Source of the DNA: Guillardia theta CCMP2712
Taxonomy: Eukaryota > Protista > Cryptophyta
DNA: 64,000 nt
Assembly (NCBI RefSeq): GCF_000315625.1
Contig: NW_005434665.1
Coordinates: 136,969-200,968, forward strand
Direction: 5' to 3'
Part shown: piece by piece, positions 55,115-59,480 of the stretch
Layout: each line of letters opens with the position of its first letter
How positions within the stretch are numbered: the stretch's first letter is position 1
The notes under the pieces: model-generated
The model's input: the letters and a program-made list of their open reading frames with translations, nothing else
The model's database searches: none
What the model was told of the DNA's origin: nothing
Made by a program: the position numbers and the translations under genes

Positions 55115-56546
55115 TTATTCCTTCCAGCGATTCCCGCAGTTGAGACACTGAACTTACAGAGTCAAGTCCGATGGTTTTGATCGCTCTTGCAATGCTTCTC
55201 ACCGTTACAAATGTCGTCATCGGCTCATCTGCACTTCTTGTCTGCATCTGATAGTATGTACACTTCCTCTTCTGGCACCTCCGACAAAGGAACAGGTCGG
55301 AGACCTGGATTGAAACAGTTAGGACACGGAATACAGGAAGCAAGATTGTTGACCGCATATTGATCTTCTGCTCCTCCAGCTGAATTTGACTTCATGTAGT
55401 ATGCTGCATATGTCTTCCGATACCTGGACAAGACAACATTTAGAACATAAAGTTACCCATCACAACAAGAGCATTACTCCTTGAGGTTGTCAGAGGCTAA
55501 CTCAGTGGGATCCATGAGGGTCAGCCTTTCAGGCTGAATGATTCCTTGTAAGATCTGCAACAAACTTACTGATCGAGCATCTTAACCTCCAACCGTACTC
55601 TTCTTCGTAGATCTGGATTCTTTGAATCTCTCAGGTTGAAGAGGATTGAACTAAGACATCGATATCAAGGAGCAGAAGGCGGCAATCAACAAAAGTACCG
55701 TGCTCTTCCCTTATATCTTGAATTGCTCTCATCCTTGCCGAAGAATCTATACCTGCAGATCTTGTTATCACTTGCTCGTGGGACAGTCGCTCACTGATAC
55801 ATGGAGTGTTCTATCGCAATAGCCGCATCGAGAGCACTGTACTTGTCCCCAGGCAGAACATGGGGCTGTAAGGCATCGCACAGCTTCTCACGTATCAGGT
55901 CTCGAACAGCATTTCGAGTTGGGTGACGATATTTCCTGATGGCATGCGCAGTCGAGGATCCAGTCAGGTCCGAGCCTGTTTTGCTCTCGTCCATTACGGA
56001 GCCGGTGCTGCCATCTTTGACGCCCTTCTCAACGCTCATCTCTGTGAACTCCATTGGCACAGAATCCTTACTTTCAGTAACGGACTGATCTCCTCTCTTC
56101 TCATCGGTGGGCTTCCCAGGTTTCTTGACTGCCTTCTCTTTTCTTGACTCCCCTGGCAGGGGCAGAGCCTTCAACTCGTCCATGGTGATCTCCTCAACAT
56201 TCTGTAGACTCGAAGTTCCCTGCATTTCGCTCGTTCCTCGGCCTTCTGATTCTTCAATGTTAACATGTTCCGGGTTATCAGACCCTCCTCGCAGCGACAG
56301 CATGGGGGCTGCGGTTATCATCCCATCCCCGTATAGCAGCCGCTGCCTCCCGGGGCCATGCAGCCTTCTGTGCTCGATCTTGTCGCACATCTTGTGATGA
56401 AGAATGCTAGCGATAGATCTATCTGATCTTTCACTGCCAGTTGTGAATCCCCACTCGACATACGCGCTGAGAAGGATCAAAATCCTCAGCAGCCTCGTCG
56501 CATCTCGGAATGGCTGATGGAAACTTGTGGAGAGCAGGCAGGGCAT
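55115..56546 (-). CDS. TFIIS: Transcription elongation factor TFIIS-like (central domain + C-terminal Zn ribbon) with an N-terminal signal-like presequence
   Basis: [33 protein letters not shown]|[10 protein letters not shown] and central [21 protein letters not shown]. An alternative upstream start is at 56663. Confidence 0.9.
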
Positions 56547-56737
56547 GGTCTCAGTGCCGTCTCCAACCCTTCTCCTCGATACCTCACACGCACGATGCTC
56601 TTCTGCTCTACTCTTCATCCTTCCTGGCCCTGCCTTTCCTCCTTCATCCATTGCATCCTCCATTACGCCGCTCCCCGCCCTGTGCCATGATCCACCCTTC
56701 CTTGAGGTAGAGCCCCCCCACTGCTGCCCTGTTTTCG

Positions 56738-56789: not shown

Positions 56790-57323
56790 GATCACCGTAG
56801 GGGTAGATGGCCAACATAGGAGAACGTTTTAAAAGTGTTATAAGATGATGTTGAGTAATCTTTGGTTGAAGAGGTGGAAATGCCCAGGAAGGGAAGCCAC
56901 TGCGAGGAATGGCGCTGCAGGGACGGCGGCGCGATGGCGCAATTGACGGTTGAAGAAGGAGAAGAAAGATGGAGATGGAGATGATTATGGGAAATAGGGC
57001 GAGGAGGAGGAGGAAGAGGGGAAGGAGGAGGAATCGAAGGAATCGACTGCTACTGCTCTGTGTAACTTTGTTTAATAGTTGTTATACTCTCATGGTGTTT
57101 GGTTGCCCTTCTCATCCTTTAGAATTTCTGTATTTGACAGAGTGTAAATCATGGCATTCGAACTTTTTTCATTGCCGAAAGCACGCTCTCGCATGTTCGT
57201 CAATAATTCTCGTGACTGGTTCTGTCTGATTTCTACTTCCAGAGACCTGCTCGCATGATTGTTATTTCTTGAGGGTTCTATTCGTTTGACTGATATTTTA
57301 TCTTGCAGAATTCCTTCCTTACC

Positions 57324-58249
57324 ATGAATTCTCAACCAAAAATCACTCTGTCCAGTGCAAACATGGTCAACCAGCCTTTCTCGAATCCGCAACGCGTCAA
57401 GAAGGTTCGATCTTCGCTCAGGAAGAGGGGATCGAGAGGAAAGGGAAAAGGCCGAAAAGAAAAGAATGCAGTGGAAGCTGTGGCAAACCAGCAGCAAGAC
57501 ACATCGCAGCCGGATGTGACCATGGAGATCCCCAAGCCAAAGCGGAGGCGCGAGAGGAAGAACCGTAAATGGAAGCCTTACTCCGCGATGACCTGGCAGG
57601 AGAAACTTGAGCAGGAGAAAAAAGAATCGATCAAGGCTGAGCAGATGGATAATCCCTTCGACGCACCGTCCAGTAGGAGAAAGAAGAGGAAGAAGAACAC
57701 CGAGATCAACATGCCCAGAGCTCCAAGAAACACCACACAGAGCTTGATACACGCAGATAGTACGGAATATGAAAGAGCAAGCTTGGATTTGGAACGAAGG
57801 GTTGTTATCCCATCGATGCAAGGAATTTTATCTAGGGAGACCCTCAAAAATGGGAGAAATTTCGATTCTCATGAAGATAGCTCAGATGATGACAGCGAAG
57901 TAGAGTATGCAACCTTGCTATCATGTTCATTAATGTTTGCTCCTCAGGGTGGAGTTCGAAGTCCTGGAAGTATTTCCTTGGGTTCTCCATACGATGGGAG
58001 CATAAAGTGGATGCTTGTTTTACATATGATTGGCTTATTCTGACTTGTACAATGCAGCGGTGATCAAGTCACTTTGCATTCTGAAGAGATCAAGAAGAGA
58101 GATAGGAAAGTCGATTTGTGACTCAAGGCAATGTGAACTTACTGCAAATTTTCTACAGGCGCATAAGTGAGCTCATAGCTGAAAATGAACAGCTCAGGAC
58201 TCGGATAGAAGAACTCGAAAGGAAAGCAAATGCAACGACAAATGCATGA
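57324..58249 (+). CDS. HEXIM-like protein, multi-exon
   Basis: Basic region, then KWKPYSAMTWQEKLEQEKKESIKAEQM, PRAPRNTTQSLI, acidic EDSSDDDSE and C-terminal coiled coil RISELIAENEQLRTRIEELE. The order matches HEXIM1. Confidence 0.75.
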
Positions 58250-58299: not shown

Positions 58300-59480
58300 A
58301 ATCGCGTATCTAAACACTCTCTTAGTCTCATACTTGTGTGCCTATCATTCTGTTTCTCGTGGCTTCCCTCATGCCGAAAGCCCAATCAGGAATCGCGTAA
58401 ATCGTCTTTTCACGCAACTCGGAGTTTCAACCTCTTTCCCAGAGGTGGTATGTTGCCATTGACCGATATTGTCATGGCCTCATTGGGAGAAGTACGTCTG
58501 AAACTTCTCGAACAAGATCGTATCTCTTCGAAGAATGTCGCTGAAGACAAGGTCAGCTCGACAGGTAACAAAACACCCTTCACTACACCTCAAAGGCCCA
58601 AAGTTGCTTACGAATGCATCGCGACTGATCGATCGCAGCTCTGTCTTGCCAACAACTTTCATGCTGCAAGATCGTTTGCTGCCGGCCATGGCCAGCGCCT
58701 GCTCAGCAGTTACGACATGCCGCACAGGCCAAGTCTGCCTACATTCTGTCCGAAGTATTGACCGTGAAACAGGGGATTTCCAACAGAGATACCCGGCTTC
58801 TCGCCATCACCGCTCTCAACCACTTTCTGCACGGAGCCTCCCATGATGAGGAAGAAGTCATCAGCAACGTCACCCTGCACCATGATTACAACTTGCGCCA
58901 ACCACAACGGGACGACAAAGCAACCTGGCGGTACACATATTCCCCATCCCTCAAGGTAGAAGGCTTGAGAGATCTTGCAAGGATGGAGATTTCCTTGGGC
59001 ATGAGAGTAGAGAAGATGGTCACCCTGCTAAGATACTGCTCGATCTCTGCAATCTCGATGGCCTACAAGAGATACAAGTCAACAATCGCTTGAGAGCAAC
59101 TGGGCTCACTTTGTCCAGCTCATCAAATTGCCGAGGGGTGATCTCTTCAAGAACGTCCTTGTTTGCTGGGATGTTTTCTTCAGAGTGAATCAACTCTGAT
59201 AACTCCTTGCTGGTGTTACTGCTCAATTTCCTTGAGCTAGAGGCCCAGAAAGCGACACGATAAGAAAGCACGTGCCGGCAAACATTCAGAGTCACAATAT
59301 TCTGCAAACTACGCTCACCTGCCACAGCAACTTCCGCTCCACCATAGCATGTGCAACTTTGTCGACTTCTGGAAAAATCACGTTGTTGTCAGCTATTCCC
59401 AACACTTGAAGCGTCTCCTTAAGACCATCAACATTCAATTTCACACCCTTTCCTTGATCCGATTGTCTGAACGTGAGCAT
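58300..59480 (-). CDS. Cyclic nucleotide-binding domain protein, multi-exon; boundaries approximate
   Basis: VIMVQGDVADDFFLIMGGSV..LFHGQYFG..EQALAM..KRSCSMKVVGKTELRSISRDAF fits a cNMP-binding fold. Confidence 0.75.

What the first reader, a model, noticed from the sequence alone, without database searches (positions are those of the whole stretch)
57324..58249. HEXIM-like gene outside animals, with PYNT replaced by PRNT
Seen: basic tract, WKPYSAMTWQEK..E....AEQM, APRNTTQSLI, acidic tract and C-terminal coiled coil. Established: HEXIM1 has WKPYYKLTWEEK..APYNTTQFLM in the same order, binds 7SK RNA and inhibits P-TEFb through the PYNT motif; 7SK/HEXIM is mostly described from metazoans. Inference: a 7SK-like P-TEFb control system, possibly with an unknown ncRNA, may exist in this algal lineage. 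The Y-to-R change could alter CDK9 inhibition.
Basis: partly seen in the sequence, partly recalled or inferred. Interest (0 to 1): 0.75.

Follow-up and report, generated by a model that had tools for sequence, protein, structure and literature searches.

The report
Cryptophyte HEXIM homologue, already catalogued
This is an expressed gene of the alga Guillardia theta for a true relative of the animal transcription brake HEXIM, but a 2023-24 preprint already lists this gene as "HEXIM-like", and whether it controls a kinase through a small RNA is untested.

Summary
Window 57324-58249 (+) is a transcribed four-exon nuclear gene of Guillardia theta. It encodes a 257-aa, mostly disordered protein with these parts in order: an arginine-rich tract, WKPYSAMTWQEK plus a helix, the peptide PRAPRNTTQSLI, an acidic tract and a C-terminal leucine zipper.

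Homology to HEXIM is real. Pfam HEXIM is below its cut-off for this gene (18.7 bits against 29) but above it in other cryptophytes (29.3-32.9). A profile built only from cryptophyte proteins reaches named animal HEXIM1 in an exhaustive search. Profile-profile comparison gives 98.9% probability (E 1.9e-17).

It is not new. Chivu et al. (bioRxiv 10.1101/2023.02.19.529146) list this protein (XP_005839073.1) in their "HEXIM-like" set and tree. Their text reports patchy HEXIM-like sequences outside Holozoa that lack key residues.

Arginine at the Tyr203 position is the common state outside animals, so "Y replaced by R" probably has the direction backwards.

No 7SK RNA was found with Rfam. P-TEFb control remains inference.

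Small additions here:
- The public 226-aa model reads into introns and lacks the coiled coil.
- The last intron is GA-AG.
- The zipper is predicted to dimerise.

The parts
57324..58249 (+). HEXIM-like gene from ATG to stop. Four exons, product 257 aa, identical to database protein P0010 (an MMETSP transcript).
   Evidence: Every exon translation is found in P0010 at the expected place.
57324..57899 (+). Exon 1, residues 1-192. Holds all HEXIM-type motifs except the coiled coil.
   Evidence: Pfam PF15313 scores 18.3 bits, E 0.0028, profile positions 1-88. RNA contigs.
57393..57458 (+). N-terminal basic motif R24-K45 (RVKKVRSSLRKRGSRGKGKGRK). The core RVRSxxRKRGxRG is conserved in the cryptophyte homologues and was not seen in the animal HEXIMs retrieved here.
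   Evidence: Invariant columns R24, V28, R29, S30, R33, K34, R35, G36, R38, G39. Motif scan.
57534..57569 (+). Arginine-rich basic region K71-K82, placed like the RNA-binding basic region (ARM) of HEXIM1 just before WKPY.
   Evidence: hhalign aligns it with the basic tract of animal HEXIMs. The role of that region in HEXIM1 is from PMC12901311.
57570..57650 (+). WKPYSAMTWQEK followed by the linker helix (AF2 helix 91-109).
57675..57695 (+). Second basic patch R118-K124 (RRKKRKK). It lies in a roughly 15-residue insertion relative to animal HEXIM.
   Evidence: Gap in the hhalign alignment. Alignment.
57714..57749 (+). P131-RAPRNTTQSLI-142, the counterpart of HEXIM1 202-PYNTTQFLM-210. P, N, T, T and Q are kept; Tyr203 is Arg135 and Phe208 is Ser140.
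   Evidence: Invariant P131, R132, A133, P134, R135, N136, T138, Q139 in cryptophytes. hhalign.
57813..57836 (+). S164-MQGILSR-171 motif, conserved in the cryptophyte alignment here. Similar [ST]MxG[LIVM] motifs appear in other non-metazoan HEXIM-like proteins. It was not seen in the animal HEXIMs retrieved.
57864..57899 (+). Acidic tract D181-E192, placed like the acidic region of HEXIM1.
   Evidence: Role of the acidic region in HEXIM1 from PMC12901311.
57900..57947 (+). Intron 1, 48 nt, GT..AG.
   Evidence: Joint seen in RNA contigs X1, X2 and X3..
57948..58006 (+). Exon 2 (GGVRSPGSISLGSPYDGSI plus 2 nt).
58007..58057 (+). Intron 2, 51 nt, GT..AG.
58058..58105 (+). Exon 3 (N GDQVTLHSEEIKKRD R), the start of the C-terminal helix.
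58106..58158 (+). Intron 3, 53 nt, non-canonical. No possible placement (58104-58107 start) gives GT..AG. The best reading is AG|GAAAGT...CAG|G, a GA-AG intron.
   Evidence: The same joint appears in three RNA contigs, with 3 nt of ambiguity. All four placements were listed.
58159..58249 (+). Exon 4: leucine zipper RISELIAENEQLRTRIEELERKANATTNA plus the stop codon.
   Evidence: AF2 helix 213-256 with pLDDT 89-96. Predicted parallel in-register homodimer.

Best explanation
SHOWN. This is the single Guillardia theta member of the HEXIM family, in the divergent 'HEXIM-like' branch found patchily outside animals. It is a transcribed four-exon nuclear gene. The 257-aa product is almost wholly disordered and carries, in HEXIM order: an arginine-rich basic region, WKPY plus a linker helix, an invariant PRAPRNTTQ peptide, an acidic tract and a C-terminal zipper. 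The zipper is predicted to form a parallel dimer.

INFERRED from HEXIM1. The dimer binds a structured nuclear RNA through the basic region. RNA binding frees the PRNTTQ peptide from the acidic tract. The peptide then docks on a CDK9/CDK12-class kinase with its cyclin T/K-type partner and restrains RNA polymerase II CTD phosphorylation.

Because Tyr203, Phe208 and the Phe262/Phe267/Tyr271-type cyclin contacts are absent, the contact chemistry, and perhaps the target, differ from animal HEXIM. Arg at the Tyr203 position is probably the older state, not a replacement.
For: Gene and transcript:
- Exon translations equal the MMETSP protein P0010.
- Spliced RNA contigs come from three studies.
- There is a single locus in the 87-Mb genome.

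Homology:
- Pfam HEXIM scores 18.3-18.7 bits here, and 29.3-32.9 bits (cut-off 29) in Baffinella and other cryptophyte orthologues.
- An exhaustive search with a cryptophyte-only profile gives 71 hits at E<=1e-3. They include HEXIM1 of a tardigrade (E 1.9e-6) and a frog (E 9.2e-4), an ichthyosporean, a glaucophyte, a colponemid and a bicosoecid.
- hhalign against nine Pfam-verified PYNT HEXIMs gives 98.9% probability, E 1.9e-17.

Constraint: PRAPRN-TQ, WKP-S--TWQE and the basic residues are invariant across cryptophyte genera at only 38-41% overall identity.

Architecture:
- AF2 predicts disorder apart from helices 91-109 and 213-256. This matches the basic region, linker helix, PYNT, acidic region and coiled-coil layout of HEXIM1 (PMC12901311).
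- The zipper homodimer scores 0.39 against a best control of 0.00. That mark was reached by 21 of 30 solved homodimers and 0 of 23 solved monomers. The runs agree in at least 81% of contacts, and partner pLDDT is at least 67. Asn237 pairs with itself at an 'a' position.

Possible partners in the genome:
- a PITAIRE-type CDK;
- two La-module genes with xRRM-type matches;
- two Bin3/MePCE-type genes.
Against: - Residues important for P-TEFb binding or inhibition in human HEXIM1 are changed. The Y203D/T205D mutant loses P-TEFb and 7SK (PMC13717190); here Tyr203 is Arg. Chivu et al. list Phe208 as functionally important; here it is Ser. No counterpart of F262/F267 (PMC6838758) or Tyr271 is recognisable.
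- No 7SK was found. The best Rfam RF00100 hit scores 19.5 bits against a cut-off of 35. It lies inside a 202-aa ORF, has no GAUC motif at the aligned position (GGGC where the model consensus has GAUC) and has no T-run. RF01052 found nothing.
- Cyclin T proper is thought to have arisen near animals (Chivu et al.).
- This gene itself is below the Pfam cut-off.
- The C-terminal halves do not align with animal HEXIM, and the zipper is much shorter (about 35 residues against about 100).
- All functional steps are inferred. Nothing was tested for RNA, cyclin or kinase binding.
Confidence: 0.55

Rival explanations
1. It is a true HEXIM homologue with a different job. On this reading it is a dimeric, disordered nuclear RNA-binding adaptor whose conserved PRNTTQ and SMQGL peptides dock on some partner other than CDK9/cyclin. 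P-TEFb inhibition would then be a later holozoan or animal invention that came with Tyr203, Phe208 and Tyr271.
For: - The key P-TEFb-contact residues are absent.
- Chivu et al. link the appearance of a key tyrosine in HEXIM to pausing and place HEXIM proper at the base of Holozoa.
- Extra conserved motifs that were not seen in the animal HEXIMs retrieved here (the N-terminal RVRS-RKRG-RG and SMQGL) point to other contacts.
- No 7SK was found.
Against: - The most conserved peptide is exactly the counterpart of the Cdk9-binding PYNTTQ peptide, with P, N, T, T and Q kept.
- The basic region, peptide, acidic tract and dimer layout that underlies RNA-gated unmasking in HEXIM1 is retained.
Confidence: 0.3
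2. The gene came from an animal or holozoan by horizontal transfer, or is contamination, and is not an old eukaryotic gene.
For: The distribution across eukaryotes is patchy.
Against: - The gene lies on a 1.14-Mb nuclear scaffold, has three short spliceosomal introns and is found in G. theta RNA data from three studies.
- Orthologues occur across cryptophytes, including Goniomonas.
- The sequences nearest to the cryptophyte profile outside cryptophytes are a colponemid, a glaucophyte and a bicosoecid, not animals.
- It carries the non-animal R state.
Confidence: 0.05
3. The similarity is a chance or convergent likeness between charged, low-complexity disordered proteins, with no common descent.
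For: - This gene is below the Pfam gathering score.
- The protein is disordered and rich in K, R, D and E.
- No solved HEXIM chain is matched.
Against: - hhalign E is 1.9e-17, with 42% identity over 66 columns that include the non-repetitive WKPYS-TWQEK and AP-NTTQ motifs.
- Hits to named HEXIM1 are significant against 1.84 billion proteins.
- Orthologues pass the Pfam cut-off.
- The order of five elements is the same.
Confidence: 0.03

Closest known systems
Animal HEXIM1/HEXIM2 (Pfam PF15313), the 7SK-dependent inhibitor of P-TEFb
   Same: The order of parts is the same: basic arginine-rich region, WKPY-x-TW-EK, linker helix, AP-x-NTTQ peptide, acidic tract and a C-terminal dimerising coiled coil. 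The protein is mostly disordered. The central 66 columns align at 42% identity.
   Different: - Tyr203 is Arg and Phe208 is Ser.
- No F262/F267/Y271 equivalents are recognisable.
- There is a 15-residue basic insertion before the peptide.
- It has an extra N-terminal RVRS-RKRG-RG motif and an SMQGL motif.
- The zipper is about 35 residues instead of about 100.
- No 7SK RNA is detectable in the genome.
- The Pfam score is below the cut-off.
'HEXIM-like' sequences of non-metazoan eukaryotes in Chivu et al., bioRxiv 10.1101/2023.02.19.529146 (PMC11482795)
   Same: This gene is a listed member, as XP_005839073.1 / GUITHDRAFT_101996. In their tree it groups with Hanusia, Baffinella, Chroomonas, Cryptomonas, Geminigera and Teleaulax. 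It shares AP[RKH]NT[TS]Q with glaucophytes, a colponemid, a bicosoecid and Capsaspora.
   Different: - Their entry is the truncated 226-aa public model, which reads into introns and lacks the coiled coil. The real product is 257 aa.
- Cryptophytes, unlike most other HEXIM-like proteins, have also lost Phe208 (S, G, N or A in its place).
LARP7/MePCE-containing RNPs outside animals, such as the telomerase RNPs of fission yeast and ciliates (from general knowledge)
   Same: G. theta encodes genes with a La module plus an xRRM-type match, and Bin3-type genes. These could cap and hold a 7SK-like RNA.
   Different: In those organisms these proteins serve RNAs other than 7SK. Their presence therefore does not indicate a 7SK system.

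Membership tests
HEXIM (Pfam PF15313) | Match to the family profile above its curated cut-off (29 bits) | tested here: inconclusive
   This gene scores 18.3 bits (exon 1) and 18.7 bits (full-length P0010), E 0.002-0.003, which is below the cut-off. Cryptophyte orthologues score 29.3-32.9 bits, above it. Profile-profile comparison with Pfam-verified HEXIMs gives 98.9% probability, E 1.9e-17.
HEXIM (Pfam PF15313) | Arginine-rich basic region directly before WKPY (the 7SK-binding ARM in HEXIM1) | tested here: met
   K71-PKRRRERKNRK-WKPY is aligned with the animal basic tract. RNA binding itself was not tested.
HEXIM (Pfam PF15313) | PYNT motif (P202, Y203, N204, T205) that binds and inactivates Cdk9 | tested here: not met
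   The sequence is P134-R135-N136-T137. P, N and T are kept and Tyr is Arg, in every cryptophyte sequence seen. The Y203D/T205D mutant of HEXIM1 loses P-TEFb and 7SK (PMC13717190).
HEXIM (Pfam PF15313) | Phe208 after the motif (NTTQF) | tested here: not met
   Ser140 here, and G, N or A in other cryptophytes. Phe is kept in the glaucophyte, bicosoecid, colponemid and ichthyosporean HEXIM-like proteins.
HEXIM (Pfam PF15313) | Acidic region downstream of the motif (autoinhibition partner of the basic region) | tested here: met
   D181-SHEDSSDDDSE-192. Function was not tested.
HEXIM (Pfam PF15313) | C-terminal coiled coil that forms a homodimer | tested here: met
   By prediction only. AF2 gives helix 213-256 with pLDDT 89-96. 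ESMFold2 homodimer score is 0.39 against a best control of 0.00. That mark was reached by 21 of 30 solved homodimers and 0 of 23 monomers. Run agreement is at least 81% and pLDDT at least 67. The model is parallel and in register.
HEXIM (Pfam PF15313) | Cyclin T-binding residues at the start of the coiled coil (F262, F267, Y271) | tested here: inconclusive
   The C-terminal halves do not align. There is no Phe between the acidic tract and the zipper.
7SK snRNP system | A 7SK RNA gene in the same genome | tested here: not met
   RF00100 gives a best hit of 19.5 bits against a cut-off of 35, inside a coding ORF. RF01052 gives none. 7SK diverges fast even within animals, so this does not show that a functional analogue is absent.
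7SK snRNP system | LARP7 and MePCE partners | tested here: inconclusive
   La plus RRM_3 matches lie at C26:274665-275411 and C9:1069284-1070883. Bin3 matches lie at C53:310296 and C85:92130-92301. Orthology to LARP7 or MePCE, as opposed to La or Bin3 paralogues, was not resolved.
7SK snRNP system | RNA-dependent binding and inhibition of CDK9/cyclin T | not testable with these tools
A PITAIRE-type CDK gene exists, but it has many exons.

The most novel reading that the evidence does not exclude
The HEXIM module (RNA-gated, dimeric, with an AP-R-NTTQ kinase-docking peptide) dates back to early eukaryotes, with Arg as the original residue. On this reading cryptophytes still run a 7SK-like RNP that restrains a CDK9/cyclin T/K kinase, using an undiscovered small RNA that no current 7SK model recognises. 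RNA-controlled release of elongation kinases would then predate animals by far.
Probability: 0.3. Interest if true: 0.7.

Novelty: already known. Interest (0 to 1): 0.3.

Why it matters
The 7SK/HEXIM brake on P-TEFb is usually taught as an animal invention tied to promoter-proximal pausing. A conserved, expressed HEXIM homologue in cryptophytes, and in glaucophytes, colponemids, stramenopiles and others, makes its origin an open question that can be tested. Guillardia theta can be cultured and has a sequenced genome, so pulling down this protein could show whether a 7SK-like RNA exists outside animals.

The existence of the gene is already on record in a preprint supplement. This report therefore adds a corrected gene model, a direction for the Y/R difference and a feature-by-feature comparison. 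It does not add the discovery.

Tried and rejected
- **Rfam 7SK (RF00100) over the whole genome.** One hit at 19.5 bits (cut-off 35), at G000:C41:226616-226822. It lies inside a 202-aa ORF that ends at a splice-donor-like GTAAGT. It has GGGC at the position where the model consensus has GAUC, and no T-run. The same search also gave sub-threshold hits in three bacterial and archaeal control genomes. Rejected as chance.
- **Arthropod 7SK (RF01052).** No hit.
- **Sequence search of solved structures**, with exon 1 and with the cryptophyte profile. No HEXIM chain was matched, only generic coiled coils.
- **Pfam CycT2-like_C (PF21797) in the genome.** No hit, and the control genomes were also silent, so this is uninformative.
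- **Classifying the PITAIRE kinase from one 91-aa exon against PDB.** CDK1, CDK2, CDK6, CDK12 and CDK13 all score alike, so it is not resolved as CDK9.
- **Modelling the complex with CDK9/cyclin.** Not done. The length window of the search for homologous proteins cannot reach full-length proteins from a short exon.
- **Neighbouring ORFs (55791-56663 minus strand, 58336-58761 plus strand).** No Pfam family.
- **Kobbi et al. 2016 (PMC5111705).** Not held in the library.
- **The search of earlier findings for 7SK, LARP7 and CDK9 in this genome.** Nothing found.

Full report
**What is there**

Window 57324-58249 (+) begins with an ATG and ends with TGA. Exon 1 (57324-57899) is an open frame of 192 codons. 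It contains, in order:
- the basic tract KPKRRRERKNRK;
- WKPYSAMTWQEKLEQEKKESIKAEQM;
- a second basic patch, RRKKRKK;
- MPRAPRNTTQSLI;
- SMQGILSR;
- the acidic tract DSHEDSSDDDSE.

The heptad segment RISELIAENEQLRTRIEELERK lies in another frame, 260 nt downstream.

**Organism**

The genome has 87.1 Mb in 669 contigs. The closest database proteins are a 226-aa NCBI/UniRef model on a 1.14-Mb contig (P0011) and a Hanusia phi protein at 82% identity. The preprint discussed below names that 226-aa model XP_005839073.1, GUITHDRAFT_101996, of Guillardia theta CCMP2712. This is cryptophyte nuclear DNA.

**Gene model and expression**

RNA-derived contigs from three independent studies lie on the stretch without a mismatch and skip three short introns:
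- 57900-57947, GT..AG;
- 58007-58057, GT..AG;
- a 53-nt intron that starts somewhere in 58104-58107.

None of the four possible placements of the third intron gives GT..AG. The best reading is AG|GAAAGT...CAG|G, a GA-AG intron at 58106-58158.

An MMETSP transcript protein in the database (P0010, 257 aa) contains every exon translation at the expected position, so I used it as the full-length reference. The public 226-aa model starts at Met14, reads through intron 1 into intron 2, and lacks the coiled coil.

**Homology to HEXIM**

- Pfam HEXIM (PF15313, cut-off 29 bits) scores 18.3 bits on exon 1 and 18.7 on P0010, which is sub-threshold.
- Orthologues from Baffinella frigidus and unnamed environmental cryptophytes score 29.3-32.9 bits.
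- I built a profile from five cryptophyte sequences only (A2) and ran it against 1.84 billion representative proteins. It found 71 proteins at E<=1e-3.
- Among the hits whose names could be recovered are HEXIM1-like of the tardigrade Paramacrobiotus (E 1.9e-6) and HEXIM1 of the frog Ranitomeya (E 9.2e-4).
- Other named hits are the ichthyosporean Sphaerothecum, the glaucophyte Cyanoptyche, colponemid Colp-15 and a bicosoecid.
- Nine hits carrying APYNTTQF all match Pfam HEXIM, with a best E of 3.2e-54.
- Their profile aligns with the cryptophyte profile at 98.9% probability, E 1.9e-17, with 42% identity over 66 columns running from the basic region to the NTTQ peptide.
- Several non-metazoan hits with R, K or H in place of Tyr also pass the Pfam cut-off, at 34-44 bits.

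Chance or compositional similarity is excluded. There is one such locus in the genome.

**Prior art**

Chivu et al. [quoted passage not shown] Their supplementary file "FinalHEXIM-like" and the matching IQ-TREE tree contain this protein, XP_005839073.1. It groups with Hanusia, Baffinella, Chroomonas, Cryptomonas, Geminigera and Teleaulax. The same set holds Goniomonas, Cyanoptyche, Picozoa, Spironema, CRuMs, stramenopiles, colponemids and Malawimonas.

No other paper in the library deals with HEXIM outside Holozoa. The headline of the finding is thus already on record, although only in a supplement and with the truncated model.

**The Y/R difference**

Human 202-PYNTTQFLM-210 corresponds to 134-PRNTTQSLI-142 here.
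- All cryptophyte sequences retrieved here have R at the Tyr203 position.
- The glaucophyte and the bicosoecid also have R. Sphaerothecum has K and the colponemid has H.
- In the preprint's 66-sequence HEXIM-like alignment, PRNTTQ, PRNTSQ and PRNPTQ together occur 19 times, PK/PH 3 times and PYNTTQ 15 times. Capsaspora reads APRNTSQF.

Arg is therefore the usual state outside animals, and Tyr looks derived. "PYNT replaced by PRNT" probably has the direction backwards.

Cryptophytes are unusual in a different respect: they have lost Phe208 (S, G, N or A), which most other HEXIM-like proteins keep.

They also share two motifs that I did not see in the animal HEXIMs retrieved here:
- N-terminal RVRSxxRKRGxRG;
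- SMQG[LI], downstream of the peptide. Similar [ST]MxG[LIVM] motifs appear in glaucophyte and colponemid sequences.

**Architecture**

AlphaFold2 with the five-sequence alignment predicts disorder (mean pLDDT 58.6), apart from a helix at 91-109 and a confident helix at 213-256. This matches the published HEXIM1 layout of basic region, linker helix, PYNT, acidic region and coiled coil (PMC12901311).

Two copies of residues 195-257 gave an interface score of 0.39 against a best control of 0.00.
- That mark was reached by 21 of 30 solved homodimers and 0 of 23 solved monomers.
- On eukaryotes it was reached by 17 of 29.
- The runs agree in at least 81% of contacts, and partner pLDDT is at least 67.
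- The model is parallel and in register, with Asn237 paired with itself.

This supports dimerisation but does not show it.

**Partners**

- Rfam 7SK found only a 19.5-bit match inside a coding ORF. The arthropod 7SK model found nothing.
- Two genes combine a La motif with an xRRM-type match, and two loci match Bin3/MePCE. Such proteins also serve other RNPs elsewhere in eukaryotes, so they are permissive evidence only.
- One FPITAIRE kinase gene (CDK9/12/13 class) lies at C8:744267. A single exon could not assign it to CDK9.
- Because that gene has many exons and joining exons is ruled out here, I did not model a HEXIM-like/kinase/cyclin complex. The one complex job went to the homodimer instead.

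**Mechanism and rivals**

The invariant PRAPRN-TQ peptide, at only about 40% overall identity, argues for a conserved docking partner. The retained basic, peptide, acidic and dimer layout argues for the RNA-gated unmasking described for HEXIM1.

- The most likely reading is an RNA-dependent dimeric adaptor acting on a CDK9-class kinase. This is inference (confidence 0.55 for homologue plus mechanism; homology alone about 0.9).
- The main rival is the same scaffold with another target, with P-TEFb inhibition arising later together with Tyr203, Phe208 and Tyr271 (0.3).
- Horizontal transfer or contamination (0.05) is contradicted by the introns, the cryptophyte-wide orthologues and the RNA data.
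- Chance likeness (0.03) is contradicted by the E-values.

**Verdict**

- Novelty: already known.
- Additions here: the corrected 257-aa model, the GA-AG intron, the direction of the Y/R change, the cryptophyte-specific loss of Phe208, the extra motifs, and a predicted dimeric zipper.

Noticed in passing
window 58104-58159: The third intron of the gene is non-canonical. The same 53-nt skip appears in RNA contigs from three studies, and no placement gives GT..AG. The best reading is AG|GAAAGT...CAG|G, a GA-AG intron whose 5' splice site differs from the consensus only at position +2.
   Followed up: partly
window 57363-58043 (the public model P0011): The public 226-aa protein model for this gene starts at Met14 and reads through intron 1 into intron 2, ending in ...MIGLF. 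It therefore lacks the real exons 3-4 and the coiled coil. This is the version used in the published HEXIM-like tree.
   Followed up: yes
window 56969-57229 (+): An 86-codon ORF that opens with MEMEMIMGNRARRRRKRGRRRNRRNR lies in the 5' leader. It is covered by the RNA contig, which starts near 56920. It could be an upstream ORF, or the contig may merge with the divergent neighbour's transcript.
   Followed up: no
window 58322-58500: Raw RNA reads change strand here: first mates lie on the minus strand only. The RNA contig X1 runs on to about 59096. This suggests a convergent downstream transcript overlapping the 3' end of the HEXIM-like mRNA.
   Followed up: no
G000:C26:274665-275411 and G000:C9:1069284-1070883: Two genes combine a La motif with an RRM_3 (xRRM-type) match. 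They are candidates for genuine La and a LARP7-family protein.
   Followed up: partly
G000:C53:310296-310460 and G000:C85:92130-92301: Two loci match the Bin3/MePCE methyltransferase domain above the Pfam cut-off.
   Followed up: no
L001:1501-1707 (G000:C41:226616-226822, minus strand): This is the only 7SK-model match in the genome (19.5 bits). It sits inside a 202-aa ORF that ends at a GTAAGT donor, so it is most likely a coding exon and not an RNA gene.
   Followed up: yes
P0010 residues 24-45 (window 57393-57458): The N-terminal motif RVRSxxRKRGxRGKG is conserved in the cryptophyte HEXIM-like proteins and was not seen in the animal HEXIMs retrieved here. It may be a second RNA-binding tract or a nuclear localisation signal.
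   Followed up: partly
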